From positions 124,001 to 188,000 of IMG/VR virus record IMGVR_UViG_3300043418_000114: a stretch of DNA of 64,000 bases, one strand, 5' to 3'. Made by a program: the position numbers and the translations under genes. Shown here piece by piece: positions 41,344 through 56,492 of the stretch; the first letter of the stretch is position 1; every line of letters starts with the position of its first letter. The notes under the pieces were generated by a model. That model was not told where the DNA came from, made no database searches, and worked only from the letters and a program-made list of their open reading frames with translations.

Positions 41344-41976
41344 ATGAAATTTAAACTCTTTGCAATTGCCGCAGTTACGGCGTTAATGACTGGCTGTGGC
41401 ACAACCAAGCTAACTGAGGATCCTATTCGCAGTCAGAAACTGTCCACTACTTTCGTTAACGAAAGCATCAAGCTGGAAACTGATTGCAAGTGGTACACTA
41501 TCAACAAAAGCGAGTGCAACATTGTTTCAATTGAATCTACTGGCGTAGCTACTACAAACGGTAACACTGAAAGCAATCGTCGTGTTGCCTTGATTCGTGC
41601 TGGTGACCGCGCACGTGCCGCCGTCCGCCACTTCATTCAAGAAGATGTGTCAAGCTCTCGTGTTAACCAGACGATTGCCAAGAACGTAGAGAAGGCAAAT
41701 GATCGCCTCAAGTCTAAGATGGACGGTGTTGATCCAGTTTCTATGAGCGACGATGAAGCCTCCAAAGATACTAACTGGTCAATTCGTGAAAATGCAAACA
41801 ATACTGCATATAGCTTGACTGAAACCATTCGTGTCAATGCCGCTGGTATCTTGAAGGGTTTCAAAGTTATCAAACAAGAAATGGTCGGACCTCAAGAAGT
41901 CGCTGTTACTATTCGCTGGGACCTCGAATCTGAGCGTATGTCCAACCAACTGCGTCGAAAGTTTGACGGACGATGA
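41344..41976 (+). CDS. Lipoprotein (LPP20-like)
   Basis: Lipobox LMTG-C; STGVA...RRVALIRAGDRARAAV. Confidence 0.6.
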   Translation: MKFKLFAIAAVTALMTGCGTTKLTEDPIRSQKLSTTFVNESIKLETDCKWYTINKSECNIVSIESTGVATTNGNTESNRRVALIRAGDRARAAVRHFIQEDVSSSRVNQTIAKNVEKANDRLKSKMDGVDPVSMSDDEASKDTNWSIRENANNTAYSLTETIRVNAAGILKGFKVIKQEMVGPQEVAVTIRWDLESERMSNQLRRKFDGR

Positions 41977-42977
41977 AATACATTCTAGCGATAGTTGTCT
42001 TACTACTCGCTGGATGTGCCACCACTACCAAGTCTGAATTCATTCGTACTACGGGTGAAGGCAACACGTTCGAGCAAGCCAAACTGGCTGCCTTTCGTGA
42101 AGCTATTCAGACTAAAGTAGGTGCCGTCGTCCTCAGTGAGCGTTTACACAACATTGAAAAAACAGTCCAGGACGATATCACCGTTCATAGCTCTGGCTAT
42201 GTAGATGACTATAAAGTTATCAATACGACAAACATCAGCGGCACATATCGTGTCACCGTAGATGTATTGGTAGCTGAAAGTAAGTTAGCTAATCAAATCC
42301 TAACAACCGCAAAAGCAGAAAAAGATTTTGCAGGTGACCGAGCAACTAATGCCTATTCTACATACATGAATCAAGCAAACGATGCAGACAAAATTGTTGC
42401 ACGAGTGCTTAGTGGATATCCACGACATGCTTTCATCCTTGAACAAGGCCCATATGTGATTGGTGTAGATCAGTATCGATCTGGTAAAATCGTGCTACCA
42501 TTCAAAGTTCGATGGAGTAAAGACTATCTGACCGCAGTGGATGAAATTGTTCATCGATATGAAGACAAGCGTGGCGTTGTTGACAAGATCATGTACAAAC
42601 CAATGAACATTGTTGAATTTCATTCTAAAAATGATAACTACTTCGGCAAGAATTCAAAATATGAGATTGTTGATCAAAGACTGCTAAATACCATTGTCAA
42701 TAGCGTTTATGGCGCAAATGAAATGCGTATTCGTACCGATGTGTATGACGGCAATCACAATTCCATGTATACTACGTGCGTAGTGCCGTGGTGGCGTAAT
42801 TACGGCAAACAATTCTTTTCATCGGACACGTATAACAATATTCTGTTTGATGGCAATCTGGAGCGTAGTGGTGAGTTAACTCTTCCAGTGACTAATGCCA
42901 ATTTACAGATGTACGCTAGAGCCGTGTCTATTGAGTTGTCAATTGTGGCAGTAAAAGATTGTCCACGAGAGCGTTAA
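41973..42977 (+). CDS. Lipoprotein with LPP20/FlgT-N-like domain
   Basis: Lipobox LLAG-C; TGEGNTFEQAKLAAFREAIQ...SSGYVDDYKVI. Confidence 0.6.
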   Translation: MKYILAIVVLLLAGCATTTKSEFIRTTGEGNTFEQAKLAAFREAIQTKVGAVVLSERLHNIEKTVQDDITVHSSGYVDDYKVINTTNISGTYRVTVDVLVAESKLANQILTTAKAEKDFAGDRATNAYSTYMNQANDADKIVARVLSGYPRHAFILEQGPYVIGVDQYRSGKIVLPFKVRWSKDYLTAVDEIVHRYEDKRGVVDKIMYKPMNIVEFHSKNDNYFGKNSKYEIVDQRLLNTIVNSVYGANEMRIRTDVYDGNHNSMYTTCVVPWWRNYGKQFFSSDTYNNILFDGNLERSGELTLPVTNANLQMYARAVSIELSIVAVKDCPRER

Positions 42978-42990
42978 GATAAATTAATAT

Positions 42991-44193
42991 ATGAGTACTG
43001 AAAACAAACTGAACCATTGCTCCTTTTGTGGCAATCATAAAGATGTAGTTAAAAAATTGATCGTTGGCGATGACGTTGCTATCTGTAGCGACTGTATTGA
43101 CCTGTGTACTCAATTAATTGTTGATGACGGCACGGTAGAGGACAATTCTATCAAGACCAATGATCAATATGATCCTGCCTTAATTAAGACTTACTTGGAT
43201 CAACACGTTATTGGCCAAGATAGTGCTAAAATGGTACTATCGGTGGCTATCGCAAATCACTATAAGCGAATCACTCATCCACCTAAAGATTTAGATATCT
43301 CGAAGGGCAACGTTCTTATCGTAGGTCCCACTGGCAGTGGTAAAACATTGCTTGCGAAAACCGTAGCGAAATACCTTAACGTTCCATTTGTAGTGGCTGA
43401 TGCAACTAGCTTAACCGAAGCTGGCTATGTAGGTGATGACGTTGAATCAATGATCAGTATGCTAGTTGCTAATGCAAACGGCGATACTAAACTAGCAGAG
43501 CGCGGAATCGTGTTTGTTGATGAAATCGACAAGATTGCACGTAAGGGTGAGTCTACCAGCTTAACCAGGGACGTTTCAGGCGAAGGTGTACAACAAGCAC
43601 TATTGAAACTAGTCGAAGGTACTGTGTGTCGTGTTCCTGCACAGGGTGGTCGTAAGCACCCAGGTGGAGATATGCTAGAAGTCAACACCAAGAACATCCT
43701 GTTCATTGCTGGTGGCGCATTCGTTGGCTTGAAAGACGTTATCGAGCGTAGAACTAACGGCGGTGGCATTGGATTCGGAGCAACTGTAAAGAAATCCCAA
43801 CAAGAAAGCAATTTAGGTGAAGTCACTCCTGATGACTTGACTAAGTTCGGCATGATTCCTGAGTTTATCGGTCGATTCACTACTACTGTCGCTATTGAGA
43901 CACTAACAAAAGACGAACTTAAGCGTGTTCTTCTTGAGGTCAAAAACAACTATATCGCCCAGTATCAGTATCTGTTCTCCATTGACGGCATTGAGTTGGT
44001 ATTGGAGGATTCAGCACTGGATCAGATCGTAGATAATTGCGTCAAACTCAAGACTGGCGCACGTGGCTTGCACACTGAGATTGAACGTGCCCTAATGCCA
44101 CACATGTTTAACACTGGTAAATATCGTCAAAACAAGATTAAAAAGATAAATATTAATCAGGAGTTAATTTTAAACCCAAAACCAATTGTATGA
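42991..44193 (+). CDS. clpX: ATP-dependent Clp protease ATP-binding subunit
   Basis: CSFC/CSDC zinc finger, GPTGSGKT, FVDEIDK, RDVSGEGVQQALLK, RKH and IGF loops. Confidence 0.97.
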   Translation: MSTENKLNHCSFCGNHKDVVKKLIVGDDVAICSDCIDLCTQLIVDDGTVEDNSIKTNDQYDPALIKTYLDQHVIGQDSAKMVLSVAIANHYKRITHPPKDLDISKGNVLIVGPTGSGKTLLAKTVAKYLNVPFVVADATSLTEAGYVGDDVESMISMLVANANGDTKLAERGIVFVDEIDKIARKGESTSLTRDVSGEGVQQALLKLVEGTVCRVPAQGGRKHPGGDMLEVNTKNILFIAGGAFVGLKDVIERRTNGGGIGFGATVKKSQQESNLGEVTPDDLTKFGMIPEFIGRFTTTVAIETLTKDELKRVLLEVKNNYIAQYQYLFSIDGIELVLEDSALDQIVDNCVKLKTGARGLHTEIERALMPHMFNTGKYRQNKIKKININQELILNPKPIV

Positions 44194-44408
44194 GAAAAGG
44201 CAGACGAGTAATTGTTAATGATGGCAACGTTGAAAAGGCGTTGCGTAAATTTAAAAAGAAGATCGCGGATCAGGACCTGCTACAGGAAGTTCGTGATCGT
44301 GGACAGTTTGTTAAACCTACAATTAAGCGTAAGTTAGCTAAGAGCCAGGCTAAACGTAGATGGCAAAAGTACTTGCGTGATCAGAGTTTGCCTAAGAAAC
44401 TCTATTAA
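44190..44408 (+). CDS. rpsU: Ribosomal protein bS21
   Basis: VNDGNVEKALRKFKKKI...LLQEVRDR..FVKPTIKRK. Confidence 0.9.
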   Translation: MRKGRRVIVNDGNVEKALRKFKKKIADQDLLQEVRDRGQFVKPTIKRKLAKSQAKRRWQKYLRDQSLPKKLY

Positions 44409-44445
44409 ACCAAAATATTAGAATTTTTTGCGTATTTTTAGTTAA

Positions 44446-44517
44446 ATAAATACGACAGTAGATGCCGATGGTCGGGTCTACTACATGTCATAACTTGCTT
44501 ATTAAAGGAGAAAACAA
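44446..44517 (+). promoter_or_regulatory. Late promoter plus ROSE-like structured leader of hsp20
   Basis: ATAAATA at 44446; hairpin 44458-44481; CUUGCUU pairs with AAGGAG with a bulged G. Confidence 0.6.
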
Positions 44518-44955
44518 ATGACAAAAACTTTATCCCTTCGTTCCCTCGACATTCCGTCAATCCACAAATTTGGTATCGGCTTCGATAACATGTTTGATGA
44601 ATTAATGCGAATGAATGCTCAACAATCCCTTAACTATCCTCCATACAACATTCTCAAGAATACCGATGATTCATTCGATATTCAAGTGGCTGTTTCTGGC
44701 TTTAGTGAAGGTGAGATTGAGGTCAATCTTGACAATCGAGTATTGACTATCAAGGGTCAGAAGGCGGAAGATGTAGTTGCTGAATATCTGCATAAAGGTA
44801 TCAGTACACGTGATTTCGTGCGTGAGTTCACTCTAGCCGAACACGTTGAGGTAATCAATGCCTCACAAAAAGATGGTATTTTGACTATTCAACTAGAACG
44901 CATCGTTCCAGAAGAAAAGAAACCGAAAAATATCCAGATATCTTATTCTAAATAA
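44518..44955 (+). CDS. hsp20: Small heat shock protein (Hsp20/IbpA-like)
   Basis: IGFDNMF, NYPPYNI, AVSGF, YLHKGIS.R.F, DGILTI.LER.VPEEKKP. Confidence 0.95.
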
Positions 44956-45623
44956 GAATTGCATTTTTCAAAATGCCATCGTCGCATTCCTGGGGTAGCT
45001 CCAGATTTGCCACAATGCGGACAGGTAATCATGATTGAATTAGGATTAACATTCTTTTGAAAATTATGATTACCTTCTCGAACTAGCTCACGCGCCCGTA
45101 CTGATTCTTGGTTATATGTTCGACCACTTGATCTGATTCCAATACTAATATTTTTTCGATGTTGATCCGTCTTGAATCCTTTATAATTATCTTTGTTGGA
45201 TTTAGGGCCTTGTAATTTTCGGATAAACTCTGGATTTTTAACTTTCGCTTGATTTGCTAATTTAATTTTATTTGCATGATCTACTGATTTTGGACCTCTG
45301 AGTTTTTCTCTCGTTTCCAATGAATGCTTATGGCCAGTAGTTCCCTCTCCACCATCGGTTTGATTTCTTAGTATACCTGTCATGTTGTCCTTGCGACCAT
45401 ACCATCTTATCATGCGTCTTTCCAACGCAAAAGCTCCAATTTCAGATAGTGATTGTTCCATGATGATAATTCTACATTCATCTACTGGCAAATTTATGCA
45501 ATGATTTTTGTGCCATGCCCTACCATTAAATCCCTTTCCGATATAGTACGGCGTACCATCGTCGCGCAAATATGCGTAAACATAGAACCCAATCGGTGGA
45601 TTCTTTTTTGAATAAATAGTCAT
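44943..45623 (-). mobile_element. Free-standing GIY-YIG-like homing endonuclease gene with NUMOD-type repeats
   Basis: [45 protein letters not shown]-terminal CPHCG; antisense insertion with its own late promoter. Confidence 0.8.
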
Positions 45624-45646: not shown

Positions 45647-45694
45647 AGAGTAGTCGGAGAGGTTAGAGACTCGCGGACTACACTTTTATTTATA
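45647..45694 (-). promoter_or_regulatory. Late promoter and leader hairpin of the endonuclease gene
   Basis: TATAAATA (45694-45687) then a GTAGTC...GACTAC stem upstream of an AGGAG RBS. Confidence 0.6.
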
Positions 45695-45703
45695 CCAAAC
45701 CAA

Positions 45704-45764
45704 TTGATATTACTTAATTTAGTGATATAATTAACGAGAGTAGTCGAAAGGCTACTCACTTTTT
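45704..45764 (+). promoter_or_regulatory. sigma70 promoter with GNRA leader hairpin before clpS
   Basis: TTGATA-N16-TATAAT; GAGTAGTC-GAAA-GGCTACTC then ACTTTTT. Confidence 0.55.
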
Positions 45765-45783
45765 AAATTTAACCGTAAAGATT

Positions 45784-46092
45784 ATGCCTACCAAAACTGA
45801 TACAAAAATTAAAATCAAACCCAACGTTGCTCTACAAGAACCACCGTTGTTTAAGATCATTTATATCAACGATGACGTAACGAGCATGGAGTTTGTTGTG
45901 TCTAGTTTGATTGACTACTTCAATTACACCGAAGATACAGCCGAGAATATCACCATGGATATTCACAATCAAGGTAGTGCAGTTGTCGCTATTTTACCTT
46001 ACGAGATTGCCGAACAAAAAGGCATCGAGGTAACTCTTGACGCACGTAGTCAAGGATATCCACTTCAAGTCAAAGTGGAAGCTGAGGCTTAA
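45784..46092 (+). CDS. clpS: N-degron adaptor ClpS
   Basis: PPLFKIIYINDDVTSMEFV, DIHNQGSAVV, YEIAEQK, GYPL. Confidence 0.92.
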   Translation: MPTKTDTKIKIKPNVALQEPPLFKIIYINDDVTSMEFVVSSLIDYFNYTEDTAENITMDIHNQGSAVVAILPYEIAEQKGIEVTLDARSQGYPLQVKVEAEA

Positions 46093-46781
46093 ACCTCTAT
46101 TCTTTTTGCCCAATAAGGGCTCTTATCATAACAAGCGTTATTAATGTAGTTGATGCCATTTAAATTGGTGTCAACTACTTTTTTATATGTGCCGTACACC
46201 CAGTGATTGATCTTGTGTTCAGTATCTGCTTCTAATGCTATCTTCAATGGCAGATGACCATTCACGAAACTTGGCGCTTCGCCAAAATATAGCTTTTCAT
46301 CTGGCACACTATTCGATACTACAATAATATTCTTAACATCTAAGTGTTTTTGTAGTCTTTCGATTGTACTCTTGAGGTAAATAATATCCTCATGGCGTAA
46401 TTCTTCGACTTTTAAATCAGTGACCATGTCACTTGGTAACGTGTTGCCGTACCATCCATTTGCTCCTGCAATCGCAATCCCATCGATAATGACGACATGA
46501 TGATGCAGTAGAGCCAAGTTACGTATACTACTACATAGCTTGTGTATTTCTTTGGTTCTAGTATCAACGTCAGCTACACCATCATATTCCAGTGAACCGA
46601 GGGAATAGAACACTCCTTGATAAAACTTACTCAAATGAGATAGGGTTTGATGTATGGTTTTCAAGTCAGGACTAATATTACCAGCGATTATGCAATATAA
46701 ACTAGTCGCCTTGCCTTCCCAATTTAAACTTGCACCTGGTGCAAGATTTAAATCGCTAATTACATCAAACCCAATCTTCAT
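46089..46781 (-). CDS. Calcineurin-like metallophosphoesterase homolog with degenerate metal ligands
   Basis: SDLNL / AGNI / LGSLEY / VSNSVP / YGTYK in place of DLH / GD / GNHE / GHH / GHTH. Confidence 0.65.
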   Translation of the reverse strand: MKIGFDVISDLNLAPGASLNWEGKATSLYCIIAGNISPDLKTIHQTLSHLSKFYQGVFYSLGSLEYDGVADVDTRTKEIHKLCSSIRNLALLHHHVVIIDGIAIAGANGWYGNTLPSDMVTDLKVEELRHEDIIYLKSTIERLQKHLDVKNIIVVSNSVPDEKLYFGEAPSFVNGHLPLKIALEADTEHKINHWVYGTYKKVVDTNLNGINYINNACYDKSPYWAKRIEV

Positions 46782-47110
46782 TATTTTGCTACGCGAATTT
46801 TAGCTTTTTTGACTACGGCTTTAGTAGCCTTAGCTTTAGCTGGTTGCTTCGCCGAAGCGGGTTGCTTCTTTGTAGCTTGCTTCTCAGCAGGGGCTTTCTT
46901 GGCACGTGCTTTCTTTGGGGCGGCAACTGGTACCTCAACTGCAGGTGCAGGTTGAACTACTGGTTTTACTTCCTCAACGACAGGTGTTTCTACCTTGTAC
47001 GCGGCTACCGGTGCCTCAACAACAGACTCAACTTCTTGTTTACGTTTGCTGATGAAATACACTAGTGCACCGATGACTACGATGCCAATTGCAATGTCTA
47101 ATGGACTCAT
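46781..47110 (-). CDS. Membrane-anchored Lys/Ala/Pro-rich protein
   Basis: N-terminal TM plus histone-like tail; AGGAG RBS. Confidence 0.7.
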   Translation of the reverse strand: MSPLDIAIGIVVIGALVYFISKRKQEVESVVEAPVAAYKVETPVVEEVKPVVQPAPAVEVPVAAPKKARAKKAPAEKQATKKQPASAKQPAKAKATKAVVKKAKIRVAK

Positions 47111-47243
47111 TTTTATCTCCTAAACATATATTTACTATTGGACATTTACTACTAATTTTTTGTCTAAAAGTAAACCAAAAGATTTGATATGTGATAGTTG
47201 ATTTTTATATACTACATATCTCAATTAATTATTAAGGAGTATT

Positions 47244-47834
47244 ATGAGTCTAGTCCCTATCGTCATCGAACAAACATCTAAGGGTGAACGTAGTTATGAC
47301 ATTTACAGCCGTCTACTGAAAGATCGTGTTATTTTGCTTGAAGGTGAAGTCCATGATCAAATGGCAAACCTTATCGTTGCTCAACTACTCTTTTTAGAAA
47401 GCGAAGACCCTGGCAAAGATATCAACATGTATATCAACTCTCCAGGTGGCAGTGTCACCGCTGGCATGGCAATCTATGACACCATGCAATTCATTAAGCC
47501 AGATATCCATACTATCGTGATGGGTCAAGCGTGTTCGATGGGTTCATTGCTAGCACAAGCTGGAAGCCCTGGCAAGCGTTTCATGTTGCCTAATGCTCGT
47601 CATATGATTCACCAACCATCCGGTGGTGCTCGTGGCATGCAATCGGATATCGAAATCTCCTACAAAGAAATCACTTACTTGAAAAAGCGTTTGACTGAAA
47701 TCTACGTCAAACACAACTCCGCTGGTAAGACATACGAAGAATTCGAACGTGACATGGATCGTGATAAGTTCATGAGCGCAGACGAAGCATTAGCTTATGG
47801 TCTAATCGATCAAGTGTTGGAGAAACGTCCTTGA
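47244..47834 (+). CDS. clpP: ATP-dependent Clp protease proteolytic subunit
   Basis: [27 protein letters not shown] (Ser), MIHQP (His), DRD (Asp). Confidence 0.97.
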
Positions 47835-48502
47835 TTAAGTATACACCAGTTCCAGTATCAGAACACGAATCTATTTTAGGTAAGAATTTTAAAACTAAGT
47901 TTGCGGCAGAAATGTGTGCGTATTACGCACCATTTCAAAACAAAAAGCGAGCCATTCAAGTAGCAAAAGAAACCTGGGAATATGCAGTGTCTGACAGTAT
48001 CCCTAAAGCATCATGGGTTGGTGCAGGCAACTACGTAGCAGACGTTAGGGCGCCGACAGCCGACTTAGATGTTAAGGGTCTAAGCATCAAGAGCATCACT
48101 AATAAGCAAAGCTCAGAGGCAAGTGTGTTGCAAAACAACAAACAAGAAAACGATGGTTTCGGTAAGTTGTTTGAAAGCAAGGACTACAAATCCCTCAAAA
48201 CTATGTTTGTCGATCCGATTGATGAAAAGATCAAAGATACTAATAATCTACATCTTTTAGCTATCGTCAGGGAAACTTCTACTAAGAAAGTTTACTACTC
48301 ATTGTTGAAAGTTACTAAGTCCAACTTAAATAACAAACAATTTTTAGACCGAATGGTGGTCGATGGTAAACGCAGTATATCACTTCCTATGATTGATCCG
48401 CAATTCGGTTACACTTATCTTTATATCGCCAAGCGACGAATTGAGATTAGACTGAACTGCGAAGGCATGAAAGACTACTTAGTTTATTCACACTCTTATT
48501 AA
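47831..48502 (+). CDS. Hypothetical protein, possibly a PD-(D/E)xK nuclease
   Basis: KETWEY...VADV...LDVKGLS spacing. Confidence 0.35.
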
Positions 48503-49241: not shown

Positions 49242-49445
49242 ATGGGTTATAAAATTCTCCGTGAGCGTGATGCTAAGTGGCAACCTCGCAAAGGTCTTGA
49301 AGGTCCTTTCTTCTATCCCAATGGTCAAGTCTTGTACTACGATCCTAAAGAAGGAATGTACTGGGACCCGACAACTGACTTTTTCGTTGAGTACGAACAA
49401 GTTCAGGAATTGCAAAATATGTTTTTGGAAGTTTTGAAAAAATGA
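49242..49445 (+). CDS. Hypothetical early protein
   Basis: RKGLEGPFFYPNGQVLYYDPKEGMYWDP; AGGAG RBS. Confidence 0.7.
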   Translation: MGYKILRERDAKWQPRKGLEGPFFYPNGQVLYYDPKEGMYWDPTTDFFVEYEQVQELQNMFLEVLKK

Positions 49446-49747
49446 AAATCATTCTAGCTCTCGTTATTGCACTCGCCGTAGGCACATGTTATGCCAAGGG
49501 AGGCGGAGGCGGTGGTGGTCATGGAGGTGGTGGCGGCCATGGTGGCGGCCATGCTAGCTCCAGTGGTCACTCGTCATCGTCTGGTGGCCATTCAACTTCT
49601 ACTGCAAAGAGTGGATCGACCAGTGGTGCTCATGAATCTGCACCAGCAAAGTCAACAAGTACTACTTCATCTACATGGTTTCCTTGGTGGAGTCGTGGCG
49701 GCTCTAGTTCGACCCAATGCGACAAGAATAAAGATAAAAACTGTTGA
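49442..49747 (+). CDS. Exported Gly/Ser/His-rich protein
   Basis: Signal peptide plus low-complexity body and a terminal Cys pair. Confidence 0.6.
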   Translation: MKIILALVIALAVGTCYAKGGGGGGGHGGGGGHGGGHASSSGHSSSSGGHSTSTAKSGSTSGAHESAPAKSTSTTSSTWFPWWSRGGSSSTQCDKNKDKNC

Positions 49748-51053: not shown

Positions 51054-51902
51054 ATGAAAATTGCAGTATGCAGTGACCTACATTTGGAGTTTCAAGACAT
51101 TAATCTCAAGAACACCGAGGGTGCTGAGGTTCTTATCTTGTCTGGTGATATCATGGTCGCTGATTATATGCACGATCATCCAAGCCCAGATCCATACACT
51201 CCAGGTGGCATGCGTGAGTACGGCCACAAGATGTTAATGAGTATCAGATTTCGTGACTTCCTTAAACGTGTAAGTTTTGAGTTCCCTCATGTTATCTACG
51301 TTGCTGGCAATCATGAGTTCTATCATGGTAAATGGAAAGGTAGCCTAGACGACTTGCGTTTTCAATGCGGTCAGTTACCAAACGTTTACTTCCTAGAGAA
51401 TGATATCAAGACGATTGGCGAACATACGTTCATTGGTTGTACTCTATGGACTGATTGTAACAATGGTGATCCGTTGACACTGCATTGTCTCAGTGACATG
51501 ATGAACGACTTCCGTATCATTCGCAATGATGAAGCTGGGTATACCAAACTGCGACCTGCTCATACATTGAGCCGTCACGTTAAGAGCAAACAGTACATCA
51601 AGAATATCATTCAAGGTATGCATGATGAAAAGTTTGTGGTTGTTGGTCACCATGCACCTAGCAAATTGAGTACACACGAACGTTACCAACATGCTGTCCA
51701 TTCTACAATGAACGGTGGCTATAGTAGTGACTTGAGTGAATTCATTATGGATCATCCTCAGATCAAACTCTGGACTCATGGACATACGCATGACCCATTT
51801 GATTATGTGATCGGTGAGACTCGCATTGTTTGCAATCCTCGTGGCTATGGTGGACATGATCCTCAAGCAGATTTGTTTGAGTTGAAGTTTTTGGATATCT
51901 AA
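51054..51902 (+). CDS. Calcineurin-like metallophosphoesterase (intact)
   Basis: SDLHL, SGDI, AGNHEFY, GHHAP, HGHTH, CNPRGY. Confidence 0.9.
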   Translation: MKIAVCSDLHLEFQDINLKNTEGAEVLILSGDIMVADYMHDHPSPDPYTPGGMREYGHKMLMSIRFRDFLKRVSFEFPHVIYVAGNHEFYHGKWKGSLDDLRFQCGQLPNVYFLENDIKTIGEHTFIGCTLWTDCNNGDPLTLHCLSDMMNDFRIIRNDEAGYTKLRPAHTLSRHVKSKQYIKNIIQGMHDEKFVVVGHHAPSKLSTHERYQHAVHSTMNGGYSSDLSEFIMDHPQIKLWTHGHTHDPFDYVIGETRIVCNPRGYGGHDPQADLFELKFLDI

Positions 51903-55488: not shown

Positions 55489-55757
55489 AATACTTTACAT
55501 TTAAACGTGAATCAAATGATTTTGATGATATACTAAAAGACACTATCATCAAGAAACTGTTCTCTATGAAACTTCAATGGAGAAATCACTTGATGGTAGG
55601 TATCAGTGAAGCTGGCAACGATGGCACATTTAGCTACATTACACTGAAATACGGCGATGATATGGTAACTGATATTGTCCCAGATCGTTCACCTGTTATA
55701 TACGTAGATTACTTGCCAAAGGGCAACGAAAACTACAAGGGCTCAGTATCTAAGTGA
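55485..55757 (+). CDS. Hypothetical protein
   Basis: Coupled ORF. Confidence 0.55.
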   Translation: MKYFTFKRESNDFDDILKDTIIKKLFSMKLQWRNHLMVGISEAGNDGTFSYITLKYGDDMVTDIVPDRSPVIYVDYLPKGNENYKGSVSK

Positions 55758-56492
55758 TATTAGGCGGGCTTCTGGAATACGAGTATGAGTATTCTTGCTA
55801 CCTAATAGAACGACTGTTCTAATTCCATTCTTGGTTGGTAACATCATCACGATGCATCCACCACTGCGATTAATAAATCCTGTCTTACTTACAACGAATG
55901 ATTGTAATCCAACGATGGGATTTGTGTTGTGAAATACTAGTTTAGATTTCTTAACAGGAACAACAATCAACGACTTGTTACTAGCTTGTACGATTGTTGA
56001 ATAAGAGCTTGCCGCTTGTACCATTTTAATCAAATCTTCTGCCGTACTGACATTCATCACAGATAATCCAGTTGGCTCGGCAAATTTCGTGTTAGGCATC
56101 TCTAGTGCGTATGCTTTTGAATTCATAGCATGTATACATGCAGAGAACCCGCCAGGATAATACTCACAGAGCAACCTAGCCGCTTTGTTGTCAGACTTAA
56201 CTATCGCCAAATCAATCAACGTTTGTCGTGTTTGTTCTTGGTTGTAGAGCTTTGTAGGAATAGTCTCGTCAAGCGGCTGGTTTGCATCCATGACAATCAT
56301 TACCGTCATTAATTTAGTGATGCTGGCGATAGAACGGACGGCTGTAGTATTGATGCCGTCTATTATTTTTCCTGATTCGTCAGCCACCAACCATGACTTA
56401 GCGGTAATCACTGGTTCATGTTGAACTTTGGCATTGCCCACCAGCGAAGTGAACAAAGCCGTGATCAACACGGTCTTTTTCAAAAAGTTCAT
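55743..56492 (-). CDS. pbpG: D-alanyl-D-alanine endopeptidase/carboxypeptidase (peptidase S11, PBP7-like)
   Basis: Signal peptide; ASITK (SxxK), SDN, KTG; EPTGLS..NVSTAEDL. Confidence 0.88.
   Translation of the reverse strand: MNFLKKTVLITALFTSLVGNAKVQHEPVITAKSWLVADESGKIIDGINTTAVRSIASITKLMTVMIVMDANQPLDETIPTKLYNQEQTRQTLIDLAIVKSDNKAARLLCEYYPGGFSACIHAMNSKAYALEMPNTKFAEPTGLSVMNVSTAEDLIKMVQAASSYSTIVQASNKSLIVVPVKKSKLVFHNTNPIVGLQSFVVSKTGFINRSGGCIVMMLPTKNGIRTVVLLGSKNTHTRIPEARLISLRY

What the first reader, a model, noticed from the sequence alone, without database searches (positions are those of the whole stretch)
46089..46781. Pseudo-phosphoesterase: most metal-ligand positions replaced across all five motifs in an intact ORF
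Seen: against the intact paralog at 51054 (SDLHL, SGDI, GNHEF, GHHAP, HGHTH), this 230-aa protein reads SDLNL, AGNI, GSLEY, SNSVP, YGTYK with spacing preserved and no frameshift or stop. It sits in the Clp cluster, coupled to a membrane-anchored basic protein. Inference: a selected catalytically dead fold, which could act as a nucleotide-signal sponge (cyclic oligonucleotides), decoy or protease adaptor.
Basis: partly seen in the sequence, partly recalled or inferred. Interest (0 to 1): 0.6.

Follow-up and report, generated by a model that had tools for sequence, protein, structure and literature searches.

The report
Dead phosphoesterase paired with ClpX-tether protein
A giant freshwater phage keeps, under strong selection, a phosphoesterase-shaped protein that has lost its metal-binding active site, and in the same lineage it gained a small membrane-anchored partner whose tail looks like the peptide that the adaptor SspB uses to dock onto the ClpX protease motor, so the pair probably works with the phage's own protein-degradation machinery rather than as an enzyme.

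Summary
ORF 46089-46781(-) folds as a calcineurin-like metallophosphoesterase (AF2 pLDDT 88; Z 20.4 to PptH). It keeps only 1 of the 8 canonical catalytic positions, the motif-I Asp.

It is not decaying. There are more than 1100 intact homologue clusters, dN/dS is 0.07-0.12, and identical contigs occur in an independent metatranscriptome.

The useful comparator is not the window's distant paralog. It is the positional orthologs in sister jumbo phages, which sit in the same slot convergent with ClpS and keep 7 of 8 positions. The dead forms nest inside them.

All 59 unique short dead forms, and none of 95 other forms, have an upstream, tightly coupled small gene. It encodes:
- a TM or MinD-MTS-like N-terminus;
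- an invariant PYKV motif;
- a disordered Lys/Ala/Pro tail;
- a conserved C-terminus, K-P-K-Φ-(S/T/R)-Φ-A-K-COOH. Here it reads KIRVAK, and KIRVVK in close kin. It resembles the E. coli SspB ClpX-binding peptide RPALRVVK-COOH.

The phage encodes ClpX (with the zinc-finger N-domain), ClpP, ClpS and a ClpA-like protein, but no SspB.

Best reading: a two-piece, membrane-tethered ClpX-docking module with the dead fold as its folded head. Binding is inferred, not shown. The nucleotide-sponge idea is disfavoured because the old pocket is unconstrained.

The parts
46089..46781 (-). Catalytically dead metallophosphoesterase-fold protein, 230 aa (P0001)
   Evidence: ORF. AF2 pLDDT 88. Fold matches. Keeps 1 of 8 canonical positions. 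dN/dS 0.07-0.12.
46743..46757 (-). Degenerate motif I, SDLNL (canonical D-x-H). Asp10 is kept; His is replaced by Asn (Tyr in some kin).
   Evidence: D10 is conserved in 42 of 44 dead representatives.
46674..46685 (-). Degenerate motif II, AGNI (canonical G-D). The bridging Asp is replaced by Asn35.
   Evidence: N35 is conserved in 37 of 44 dead representatives.
46584..46598 (-). Degenerate motif III, GSLEY (canonical G-N-H-E). Asn is replaced by Ser and His by Leu.
   Evidence: Position 63 is among the most variable in the dead clade, rank 197 of 230.
46302..46316 (-). Degenerate motif IV, SNSVP (canonical H). His is replaced by Asn157.
46182..46196 (-). Degenerate motif V, YGTYK (canonical G-H-x-H). 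The two His are replaced by Thr198 and Lys200.
46781..47110 (-). Partner gene, 109 aa: membrane anchor, PYKV motif, disordered Pro/Ala/Val/Glu linker, Lys/Ala-rich tail, XB-like C-terminus
   Evidence: ORF. Alignment A3. Present upstream of 59 of 59 unique short dead forms and none of 95 other forms. dN/dS 0.16-0.47.
47045..47098 (-). N-terminal hydrophobic segment of the partner (DIAIGIVVIGALVYFISK), a predicted TM anchor. In about half of the homologues it is replaced by a MinD-MTS-like amphipathic FLK(K/R)LFG.
   Evidence: The MinD MTS is KGFLKRLFGG (PMC5471200). No TM predictor was run; membrane targeting is inferred from the sequence.
46979..46999 (-). Invariant short linear motif YKVETPV of the partner (family consensus A-P-Y-K-V-[E/P/D])
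   Evidence: K39, V40 and E41 are invariant in A3. The motif is present in 53 of 55 partners scored. Its role is unknown; I propose it is the docking site for the dead fold.
46784..46810 (-). SspB-XB-like extreme C-terminus of the partner, KKAKIRVAK-COOH
   Evidence: The C-terminal pattern Φ-x-Φ-[AVT]-K holds in 63 of 74 unique partners. The pattern [KR][PA].[ILMV].[VI][AV]K$ occurs in 43 of 61 partners, 1 of 2134 genome frames and 0.0005 of shuffled tails. E. coli SspB ends RGGRPALRVVK (PMC3983244, PMC8808172).
46779..46783 (-). TAATG stop/start overlap between the partner and the dead phosphoesterase (translational coupling)
   Evidence: In homologues the gap runs from an overlap to 15 nt.
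47111..47243 (.). Divergent intergenic region between the partner operon (-) and ClpP (+). It holds a sigma70-like site for ClpP at 47184-47213.
   Evidence: RNA-library contigs stop at 47101 and resume at 47233, while DNA contigs run through.
45784..46092 (+). Phage ClpS, convergent with the dead phosphoesterase gene and overlapping it by 4 nt
   Evidence: Pfam ClpS 7.7e-25. The same arrangement is seen in every locus examined.
46146..46178 (+). Terminator-like hairpin for the ClpS transcript, lying inside the 3' end of the dead phosphoesterase ORF
   Evidence: 13-bp stem with a T tract. This is a consensus match only.
47244..47834 (+). Phage ClpP
   Evidence: ORF. Pfam CLP_protease is called on the orthologous genes.
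42991..44193 (+). Phage ClpX. Zinc-finger N-domain at 43015-43122; RKH at residue 221; IGF at residue 260.
   Evidence: Pfam zf-C4_ClpX 2.9e-12 and AAA_2 5e-32. The N-domain matches E. coli ClpX ZBD entries 2ds5/2ds6/2ds8 at 3.8e-10. Motif positions.
51054..51902 (+). It is a distant superfamily member, not part of the module.
   Evidence: Pfam Metallophos 7e-9 and PHROG 1649 4e-47. BLASTP to the dead form gives 23% identity, E 1e-3.

Best explanation
**Shown.** The 230-aa ORF is a metallophosphoesterase-fold protein that has lost the dinuclear metal site, keeping 1 of 8 canonical positions. It is nevertheless kept by purifying selection in a large clade of uncultured freshwater Rak2-like jumbo phages. 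It arose in place. The same genomic slot, convergent with clpS in the block clpX-rpsU-hsp20-clpS, holds a 262-aa ortholog with all seven metal ligands in sister phages, and the dead forms nest within these. The short dead form always comes with a new upstream gene that abuts or overlaps it (TAATG here).

**Inferred.**
- The partner is held at the inner membrane by a TM helix or a MinD-MTS-like amphipathic helix.
- It carries the dead fold, probably through its invariant PYKV motif.
- Through a long disordered linker it presents a C-terminal peptide, K-P-K-Φ-(S/T/R)-Φ-A-K-COOH. This mimics the SspB XB peptide (R-P-A-L-R-V-V-K-COOH) and docks on the zinc-finger N-domain of ClpX, either the phage's own or the host's.

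The pair would then be a split, membrane-anchored counterpart of SspB, whose layout is a folded head, a flexible leash and an XB tail. It would either deliver whatever the dead fold binds to ClpXP, or occupy and relocalise ClpX N-domains. Which of the two applies is open.

The confidence given (0.5) is for the whole statement including the inferred ClpX link; for the shown part alone (a selected, ligand-less metallophosphoesterase fold that arose in place and is paired with the new partner gene) I would put it near 0.9.
For: **Fold and loss of ligands:**

**Selection and expression:**
- 1106 intact homologue clusters.
- dN/dS 0.07-0.12, against 0.01-0.03 for ClpS and ClpP.
- Identical contigs in a metatranscriptome from another sample and study. 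Coverage breaks at intergenic regions and depth differs by gene.

**Origin in place:**
- 91 unique ligand-retaining orthologs occupy the same position next to ClpS.
- In the tree, the dead clade sits inside the ClpS-adjacent clade (SH-aLRT 98) and the short dead clade has support 99.

**Partner:**
- Found at 59 of 59 short dead forms and 0 of 95 other forms.
- MinD MTS likeness.
- XB likeness. E. coli SspB ends RGGRPALRVVK. That peptide binds the ClpX N-domain (PMC3983244; PMC9963277).
- The shared 8-residue pattern occurs in 43 of 61 partners, 1 of 2134 frames of this genome, and 0.0005 of composition-matched shuffles.

**Clp machinery in the phage:**
- ClpX has the zinc finger, RKH and IGF motifs.
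- The phage also has ClpP, ClpS and a ClpA-like protein, but no SspB.

**Complex prediction, dead fold against partner residues 24-109: weak support only.**
- ipSAE 0.33; best of 3 controls 0.00.
- The mark was reached by 58 of 80 solved complexes and 2 of 110 mismatched pairs.
- At 0.60 or under, it was reached by only 7 of those 80 and by both mismatches that passed.
- The runs agree in at least 0% of their contacts, and the partner's pLDDT is at least 36.
Against: - No binding was measured or convincingly predicted.
- The XB resemblance was noticed after the fact. It is a short motif inside a lysine-rich tail. The exact R at position -4 and V at -2 occur only in the window's subclade; most partners read KISIAK or KMTVAK.
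- Alpha-proteobacterial SspB tails are different (VVSLDxFRKK), so no single XB consensus exists, and the host is unknown.
- Two long dead forms lack the partner, so the dead fold can be kept without it.
- The co-occurrence of partner and short dead form is one evolutionary event, not repeated association.
- The gene pair lies on the strand opposite the clp genes. Synteny among related phages is expected by descent.
- The RNA evidence comes from contigs only, so it gives neither strand nor transcript ends.
Confidence: 0.5

Rival explanations
1. A membrane-associated scaffold unrelated to Clp. The dead fold and its polycationic partner form a complex at the inner membrane with some other role, such as tethering DNA or RNA through the histone-H1-like Lys/Ala tail, superinfection exclusion, or organising the envelope. 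The XB likeness is then coincidental.
For: - The partner has membrane-targeting N-termini of two kinds and a long basic low-complexity tail.
- The pair is transcribed from the strand opposite the clp genes.
- Most partners lack the exact LRVVK-type residues.
- Dead-fold precedents such as VPS29 act as rigid scaffolds for peptide motifs (PMC3101248).
Against: - The extreme C-terminal octapeptide is the best-conserved part of a fast-evolving tail. It shares five of eight positions with SspB in the family consensus, and seven of eight in the KIRVVK variants of the window's close relatives.
- The module sits inside the phage's only ClpX/ClpS/ClpP cluster.
Confidence: 0.25
2. Still an enzyme, with changed chemistry. 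The fold would use one hard metal (Mg/Ca) or none, through Asp10, Asn35, Glu65 and new residues. The precedent is the metallophosphoesterase fold repurposed in the lasso-peptide epimerase MslH.
For: - D10, N35 and E65 are conserved across the dead clade.
- In the near clade the replacements are polar (N, N, S, N, T).
- MslH appears among the fold matches, Z 11.2.
Against: - Across 44 dead representatives, the motif III, IV and V positions take G, A, P, S, K and L freely.
- The conserved N-x-R-G-R segment and a cap helix are deleted.
- No new invariant polar cluster appears across the whole dead clade.
Confidence: 0.1
3. A nucleotide-signal sponge or decoy. The dead pocket would sequester cyclic oligonucleotide or other immune signals without cleaving them.
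For: - Jumbo phages carry several phosphodiesterase families proposed to counter nucleotide signalling (PMC7824862).
- A dead hydrolase that still binds its substrate is a known route to a sponge.
Against: - The former pocket is not under specific constraint.
- Candidate phosphate-binding Arg residues and cap elements are lost.
- The ancestral substrate is unknown.
- The protein is coupled to a membrane tether, and there are no multiple copies or oligomer signals.
- No similarity to known sponge folds was seen.
Confidence: 0.05
4. A decaying pseudogene or annotation artefact.
For: No Pfam hit. Catalytic residues are lost.
Against: - The ORF is intact in more than 1100 clusters, with conserved length.
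- dN/dS is about 0.1 with synonymous sites near saturation.
- The fold is predicted with confidence.
- It is present in an RNA library.
Confidence: 0.01

Closest known systems
SspB (ClpXP specificity-enhancing adaptor of proteobacteria)
   Same: The layout of the two-gene module as a whole is the same: a folded head, a long disordered leash, and a short extreme C-terminal peptide with a basic-P-x-Φ-x-V-(V/A)-K-COOH pattern. E. coli SspB ends RPALRVVK. The partner ends KAKIRVAK here, KIRVVK in close kin and KPKISIAK in the majority. That SspB peptide binds the ClpX zinc-finger N-domain (PMC3983244, PMC9963277), and the phage ClpX has such a domain.
   Different: - No sequence or fold homology to the SspB substrate-binding domain. 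PF04386 is absent from the phage.
- Head and leash are two polypeptides.
- The leash is membrane-anchored.
- Binding to ClpX is untested.
VPS29 (retromer) and other inactive metallophosphoesterase-fold proteins: DNA polymerase alpha/delta/epsilon B subunits, Plasmodium GAP50
   Same: The fold is the same, enzymatic function is lost, and the protein is kept as a rigid interaction scaffold. VPS29 is described as not an active metallophosphatase but a scaffold for accessory proteins (PMC3101248). All of these appear among the structural matches: GAP50 Z 13.9, VPS29 Z 8.6, Pol delta B subunit Z 8.6.
   Different: - Independent origin, in a phage.
- Much closer in structure to active enzymes (PptH Z 20.4) than to those scaffolds.
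- Here the ligand-complete orthologs still exist in sister genomes, and the steps of decay can be seen.
PptH (Rv2795c) phosphopantetheinyl hydrolase, MPPED2, Rv0805, TT1561
   Same: These are the best structural matches, over the whole chain: Z 20.4, 16.6, 16.4 and 17.6. Foldseek gives E 3e-8 for 6unc.
   Different: Only 12-15% identity. They are active dinuclear enzymes. No functional inference for the ancestral substrate is justified.
MinD C-terminal membrane-targeting sequence (KGFLKRLFGG)
   Same: About half of the partners start with M-x-(D/K/E)-F-(L/I)-K-(K/R/N/S)-L-(F/L)-G. This is nearly the MinD amphipathic helix (PMC5471200).
   Different: It sits at the N-terminus rather than the C-terminus. 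In the window's own partner a TM helix takes its place.

Membership tests
Calcineurin-like metallophosphoesterase superfamily (fold-level homology) | Four-layer alpha/beta/beta/alpha sandwich fold shared with solved members | tested here: met
   AF2 pLDDT 88. Foldseek has 110 PDB matches at E<=1e-3, all listed ones metallophosphoesterases. VIA-align Z 20.4 to 6unc over 221 residues.
Calcineurin-like metallophosphoesterase superfamily (fold-level homology) | Sequence homology traceable to members that pass the curated family model | tested here: met
   The query itself has no Pfam hit. The profile search reaches relatives with 8 of 8 positions that pass PF00149. hhalign to the 7-of-8 orthologs gives probability 100%, E 5e-58.
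Active metallophosphoesterase (enzyme) | Five motifs D-x-H / G-D / G-N-H-(D/E) / H / G-H-x-H supplying seven metal ligands plus the catalytic His | tested here: not met
   The pattern is D-N-N-S-L-N-T-K, so 1 of 8 positions is retained. All 120 closest homologues listed retain at most 2 of the 8.
Active metallophosphoesterase (enzyme) | Metal binding and phosphoester hydrolysis | not testable with these tools
   Needs ICP-MS and activity assays.
Pseudoenzyme (selected inactive homologue of an enzyme) | Homologous to an enzyme family, catalytic residues lost, yet under purifying selection and expressed | tested here: met
   Homology as above. dN/dS 0.07-0.12. 1106 clusters. RNA-library contigs with gene-wise coverage (no strand information).
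SspB-type tethering adaptor of ClpXP (applies to the partner plus dead-fold module) | Extreme C-terminal XB peptide preceded by a disordered linker | tested here: inconclusive
   The motif K-P-K-Φ-(S/T/R)-Φ-A-K-COOH is conserved in 63 of 74 partners. It resembles RPALRVVK-COOH and is rare in the background. This is a resemblance of a short motif only. Alpha-type SspB tails differ.
SspB-type tethering adaptor of ClpXP (applies to the partner plus dead-fold module) | Homology to the SspB substrate-binding domain (PF04386) | tested here: not met
   No PF04386 match anywhere in the 364-kb phage genome. The dead fold is a metallophosphoesterase fold. The module is therefore not a member of the SspB family; at most it is an analogue.
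SspB-type tethering adaptor of ClpXP (applies to the partner plus dead-fold module) | [quoted passage not shown] | not tested
   The single complex-prediction job went to the dead-fold/partner pair. This needs peptide binding and ClpXP assays.
Phage nucleotide-signal sponge | A conserved ligand pocket retained without catalysis | tested here: not met
   The former ligand positions of motifs III-V rank 108-213 of 230 in conservation across 44 dead representatives. The N-x-R-G-R segment and the cap helix are lost.
Phage nucleotide-signal sponge | Binding of cyclic nucleotides and protection from CBASS, Thoeris or Pycsar | not testable with these tools
   Needs binding screens and infection assays.

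The most novel reading that the evidence does not exclude
A phage-invented, split and membrane-anchored ClpXP adaptor. An enzyme fold stripped of its metal site would serve as the cargo-recognition head. A separately encoded disordered leash, with a MinD-like or TM anchor, would copy the SspB XB peptide to plug the head into the phage's own ClpX. This would give the phage a programmable, membrane-localised degradation or sequestration device. It would be the first adaptor built on a metallophosphoesterase fold and the first phage mimic of the XB tether.
Probability: 0.3. Interest if true: 0.8.

Novelty: new variant of a known kind. Interest (0 to 1): 0.6.

Why it matters
Three reasons.

1. **A clean natural series of pseudoenzyme birth.** The same genomic slot in related jumbo phages holds a ligand-complete form, partly decayed forms, a long dead form, and a short dead form with a new partner. 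The order of events can therefore be studied: ligand loss, then loop deletions and partner gain.

2. **A concrete, cheap hypothesis for why some jumbo phages carry their own ClpX, ClpP and ClpS.** Comparative surveys have noted these genes without a mechanism (PMC6102473, PMC7824862). The hypothesis is a phage-encoded tether with an SspB-like ClpX-binding tail. A synthetic peptide and a purified ClpX N-domain would test it.

3. **A new type of adaptor, if confirmed.** ClpX N-domain docking peptides would be shown to be copied by viruses, and a dead-enzyme head on a membrane-anchored leash would be added to the small list of known bacterial protease adaptors. That would bear on phage takeover of host proteostasis and on engineered targeted-degradation tools.

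Tried and rejected
- **Cultured phages.** blastn and tblastn of the locus and protein against 50,697 phage records found nothing. The 7-of-8 ortholog finds only 22-25% identical annotated metallophosphoesterases in Rak2/GAP32-like phages. No cultured phage carries this gene, so the family is known from metagenomes only.
- **Family libraries.** Pfam and NCBIfam gave no hit for the dead form. A PDB sequence-profile search gave only noise.
- **Partner gene.** No hit in Pfam or PHROGs. The word search found only 8 relatives because the protein is low-complexity and evolves fast. Homologues were recovered by position instead.
- **Distant 8-of-8 relatives.** Their contexts are unrelated: a bacterial contig and a giant-virus-like contig. 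They say nothing about the ancestral substrate. I did not transfer PptH's function.
- **Complex prediction of the dead fold with the partner.** Weak support only (numbers in the For line). I do not count it as showing binding.
- **Regulator of the intact metallophosphoesterase at 51054.** Considered, but the two are only distant superfamily relatives and there is no evidence for pairing. Not pursued.
- **Second ORF ending LRVVK.** It lies outside the window (G000 211279-211542, minus strand) and was checked as a possible second XB carrier. The ending is kept only in its closest relatives, so it is not used as evidence.
- **Natural XB variation.**
  - The genome scan with E. coli SspB returned only Enterobacterales, all [A/S]LRVVK.
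  - The phylum-wide family search returned mostly alpha-type tails, VVSLDxFRKK.
  - XB peptides are therefore not uniform, and the host's type is unknown.
- **Length limits of the searches.** The word search sees only proteins 0.55-1.75 times the query length. The unrestricted representative search showed fragments and one 490-aa RING-finger fusion among the 8-of-8 relatives, but no fusions of the dead form.
Full report
**1. What the window is**

The window is bases 124001-188000 of a 364,247-bp viral record with direct terminal repeats, rated complete. Its family-B DNA polymerase is 44-48% identical to those of Sinorhizobium phage Phosso, Agrobacterium phage Atu_ph07, Xanthomonas phage XaC1 and Klebsiella phage RaK2. 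It is therefore an uncultured Rak2-like jumbo phage. The runs that hold its DNA are mostly freshwater metagenomes.

**2. The observation**

ORF 46089-46781(-) encodes 230 aa with SDLNL, AGNI, GSLEY, SNSVP and YGTYK at the five motif positions, as reported. Pfam and NCBIfam see nothing, and PHROG 1649 (metallo-phosphoesterase) matches at only 1.2e-3.

Three lines show the homology is real:
- An AF2 model built on 34 homologues has pLDDT 88 and pTM 0.88. It matches solved metallophosphoesterases over its whole length. Foldseek gives 6unc (PptH) at E 3e-8, followed by Dbr1, MPPED2, Rv0805 and Mre11. VIA-align gives Z 20.4 to 6unc, with rmsd 3.4 over 221 residues. Viral models give the same answer.
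- A profile search of 1.8 billion representatives found 577 relatives at E<=1e-3. These form a continuous series out to proteins that carry all canonical motifs and pass Pfam Metallophos.
- hhalign against the nearest ligand-retaining group gives probability 100% and E 5e-58 over 230 columns. It aligns DLN with DLH, GN with GD, GSLEY with GN(D/E)EH, SNSVP with THTVP, and YGTYK with FGHYH.

Of the eight canonical positions, only the motif-I Asp remains.

**3. It is selected and present in RNA**

The word search found 1106 clusters at 90% identity. All are 229-234 aa, and they lie on contigs up to 364 kb. The ESM Atlas cluster has 1496 members, 99% viral.

| Gene | Pairwise dN/dS against five orthologs |
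|---|---|
| Dead phosphoesterase | 0.07-0.12 |
| ClpS, ClpP | 0.01-0.03 (closest pairs) |
| Upstream small gene | 0.16-0.47 |

Synonymous sites are near saturation (dS about 1-2).

A freshwater metatranscriptome from another sample and study holds contigs identical to the window, and they fall into gene-shaped blocks:

| Contig | Genes covered | Depth |
|---|---|---|
| 44453-44901 | HSP20 | 284 |
| 45680-47101 | ClpS, dead phosphoesterase, partner | 42 |
| 47233-48230 | ClpP and the next gene | 17 |

There is no coverage over the 47102-47232 intergenic region, although DNA contigs cross it. The ClpP block starts about 10-15 nt downstream of where the sigma70-like site at 47184-47213 would place a start. 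This pattern fits RNA rather than carried-over DNA. Contigs give neither strand nor transcript ends.

**4. Where it came from**

In every locus examined the gene is convergent with clpS at the end of a clpX-rpsU(S21)-hsp20-clpS block.

In sister phages (ClpS 55-70% identical) the same slot holds a protein of about 262 aa reading D-H / D / N-(D/E) / H / H-H. All seven metal ligands are there; only the catalytic His of motif III is replaced, with a His two residues later. I counted 91 unique sequences of this kind.

Other states also exist:
- Partly decayed forms, such as DHNNAHHT, DYDDLHHH and DHDNDHHP.
- Long dead forms of 254-271 aa, such as L172 and L214.

A maximum-likelihood tree of 124 sequences (quick search, LG+G4, rooted on an 8-of-8 relative) gives these placements:
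- All ClpS-adjacent forms fall in one clade (SH-aLRT 98), among canonical 8-of-8 relatives.
- The main group of dead forms lies inside it (84).
- The short dead forms are a well-supported subclade (99).

The root is assumed, not inferred. Loss rather than gain is the only plausible direction for seven coordinated ligands.

Relative to the 262-aa form, the short form has lost 17, 8 and 6 residues. The 17-residue deletion removes a helix (122-133) that is confidently predicted in the ortholog model (pLDDT 93.9). The 6-residue deletion removes the N-x-R-G-R segment conserved in the metal-retaining relatives.

**5. Is the old pocket still used?**

Within the window's near clade (63-86% identity) the replacement residues are invariant. 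That clade is conserved everywhere, however.

Across 44 representatives of the whole dead clade the picture differs:
- The motif III Asn, motif IV His and both motif V His positions take P/S/A/G/K, N/G/S and G/S/T. They rank 197, 108, 141 and 213 of 230 in conservation.
- Only D10 and N35 stay conserved.
- The residues that stay conserved are mostly shared with the active relatives: D6, S9, W21, Y54, N108, W110, D132, Y135, Q144, D186, K190, W194, N215, Y223.

This argues for a preserved framework or surface, and against a preserved ligand pocket. It is the main reason I rate the sponge idea low.

**6. The partner gene**

Directly upstream on the same strand, overlapping by TAATG, lies a 109-aa ORF (46781-47110).

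| Form of the phosphoesterase gene | Unique sequences with a homologous upstream gene |
|---|---|
| Short dead | 59 of 59 (overlap to 15-nt gap) |
| Ligand-retaining | 0 of 91 |
| Partial | 0 of 2 |
| Long dead | 0 of 2 |

In the forms without it, the neighbouring gene is on the other strand. This is one event on the tree, so it is an association by descent and not a statistical one.

The partner evolves fast but keeps a fixed plan:
- **N-terminus.** Either a hydrophobic TM-like helix (25 of 55) or an amphipathic M-x-(D/K/E)-F-(L/I)-K-(K/R/N/S)-L-(F/L)-G (29 of 55). The latter is almost the E. coli MinD membrane-targeting sequence KGFLKRLFGG (PMC5471200). Two interchangeable membrane devices make membrane localisation a fairly safe inference.
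- **Motif.** A nearly invariant A-P-Y-K-V-(E/P/D).
- **Linker.** Rich in Pro, Ala, Val and Glu.
- **Tail.** (K-A-P-A)n.
- **Extreme C-terminus.** By position from the end: K (58 of 74), P (54), K (52), I/M/V/L (65), S/T/R (60), V/I (67), A/V (65), K (70).

**7. The SspB likeness**

E. coli SspB, translated here from the K-12 record, ends RGGRPALRVVK. That peptide (XB) binds the ClpX N-domain and competes with N-domain-dependent substrates (PMC3983244; PMC8808172). SspB itself is a native domain followed by a disordered region that ends in this short ClpX-binding segment (PMC9963277).

The partner ends KKAKIRVAK in the window, KIRVVK, RIRVVK or NLRVVK in several relatives, and KPKISIAK or KPKMTVAK in most.

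| Set tested | Matches to [KR][PA].[ILMV].[VI][AV]K$ (a pattern SspB satisfies) |
|---|---|
| Partners | 43 of 61 |
| Stop-to-stop frames >=50 aa in this phage genome | 1 of 2134 |
| Composition-matched shuffled tails | 0.0005 |

The phage ClpX (42991-44193) has:
- the C4 zinc finger (Pfam 2.9e-12);
- an N-domain that aligns to the E. coli ZBD structures 2ds5/2ds6/2ds8 (E 3.8e-10);
- RKH and IGF motifs.

The phage also has ClpP, ClpS and a 758-aa ClpA-like protein, but no SspB.

Caveats:
- The likeness was noticed after the fact.
- It is a short motif.
- Alpha-type SspB tails read VVSLDxFRKK.
- The host is unknown.

**8. Does the dead fold bind the partner?**

Coupled translation and joint origin suggest so.

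The one complex prediction (dead fold against partner residues 24-109) gave weak support:
- ipSAE 0.33; best of three controls 0.00.
- The mark was reached by 58 of 80 solved complexes and 2 of 110 mismatches.
- At 0.60 or under, it was reached by only 7 of those 80 and by both mismatches that passed.
- The runs agreed in at least 0% of contacts, and the partner's pLDDT was at least 36.

I treat this as compatible, not as evidence. Two long dead forms exist without a partner, so the dead fold has some value on its own.

**9. Verdict**

*Shown:*
- a selected metallophosphoesterase-fold protein without its metal site, present in an RNA library;
- its origin in place from a ligand-complete ortholog;
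- its invariable pairing, in the short form, with a new membrane-targeted disordered protein that carries three conserved short motifs.

*Inferred:* the partner's tail docks ClpX the way SspB's does. The pair would act as a split, membrane-anchored adaptor or as a sequestering device for ClpX(P).

Its protease-adaptor option gains specific, testable support, though through the partner. Its sponge option loses ground.

The kind (an inactive metallophosphoesterase fold used as a scaffold) is known from VPS29 (PMC3101248), the polymerase B subunits and GAP50. The phage setting, the visible series of decay, and the SspB-like tether are new.

Noticed in passing
window 44943-45623 (-): A 226-aa ORF lies between hsp20 and clpS. 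From its sequence I take it for a GIY-YIG-type homing endonuclease, but Pfam gave no significant hit. It is absent from L001-L003, L007-L009 and the IMG/VR loci checked (hsp20 lies within ~100 nt of clpS there); L006 is cut off inside the gene beyond clpS. In the probable source sample, a low-depth contig joins 44928 to 45738, skipping 809 bases with 39 other letters between them. The metatranscriptome shows a loose end at 44928. This looks like a presence/absence polymorphism of a mobile endonuclease gene.
   Followed up: partly
window 42991-44955 and 45784-47834; G000:C1:107787-109949: The phage carries a full Clp set: ClpX with zinc finger, ClpS, ClpP and a 758-aa ClpA-like protein (786 bits, below the ClpA equivalog cut-off). 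It also carries ribosomal protein S21 and an HSP20. The HSP20 contig is by far the deepest in the RNA library, at 284 against 3-42 for its neighbours.
   Followed up: partly
G000:C1:211279-211542 (-), outside the window (L253:380-643): An 87-aa Cys/His-rich ORF ends in TTLRVVK, the exact SspB-type LRVVK. Among 8 homologues the ending is kept only in the closest three (LRVVK, LRRVK, LKVVK). It could be a second ClpX-docking tail or chance.
   Followed up: partly
loci L001 5061-5627, L002 5078-5584, L003 1863-2369: In several relatives a SprT-like gene (weak Pfam hit) and a 368-505-aa gene sit between the partner gene and clpP. The window has only a 133-bp intergenic region there.
   Followed up: no
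window 46089-46178: clpS and the dead phosphoesterase gene converge and overlap by 4 nt. A terminator-like hairpin for the clpS strand (46146-46178) lies inside the 3' end of the opposite ORF, so the two transcripts probably overlap antisense. The RNA contig 45680-47101 also extends 58 nt upstream of the predicted clpS start.
   Followed up: no
window 41344-41976 (+) and 41973-42977 (+): Two adjacent ORFs just upstream of clpX have lipoprotein-like signal peptides (…LMTGCG, …LLAGCAT). The first has a sub-threshold DUF7096 match and the second has none. Loci with long dead forms (L172, L214) carry other lipoprotein-like genes near the phosphoesterase slot.
   Followed up: no
window 49442-49747 (+): A 101-aa ORF with a signal-peptide-like start, followed by Gly/His and Ser/Thr low-complexity runs (…GGGGGGGHGGGGGHGGGH…).
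   Followed up: no
window 55743-56492 (-): A phage-encoded D-alanyl-D-alanine carboxypeptidase (Peptidase_S11, 1.2e-35) with a signal-like N-terminus.
   Followed up: no
protein P0260 (490 aa): One canonical 8-of-8 relative is fused to an N-terminal RING finger (weak Pfam hits). Another, P0248, lies on a TARA contig with ankyrin-repeat and T5orf172 genes. The best BFVD fold matches are giant-virus metallophosphatases. The active relatives of this family thus seem common in large DNA viruses of eukaryotes too.
   Followed up: no
G000:C1:297631-298170 (-): A third metallophosphoesterase-domain ORF (355-aa open frame, Pfam 2.9e-7) lies elsewhere in the phage genome. It may be the SbcD/Mre11-type nuclease, but I did not examine it.
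   Followed up: no
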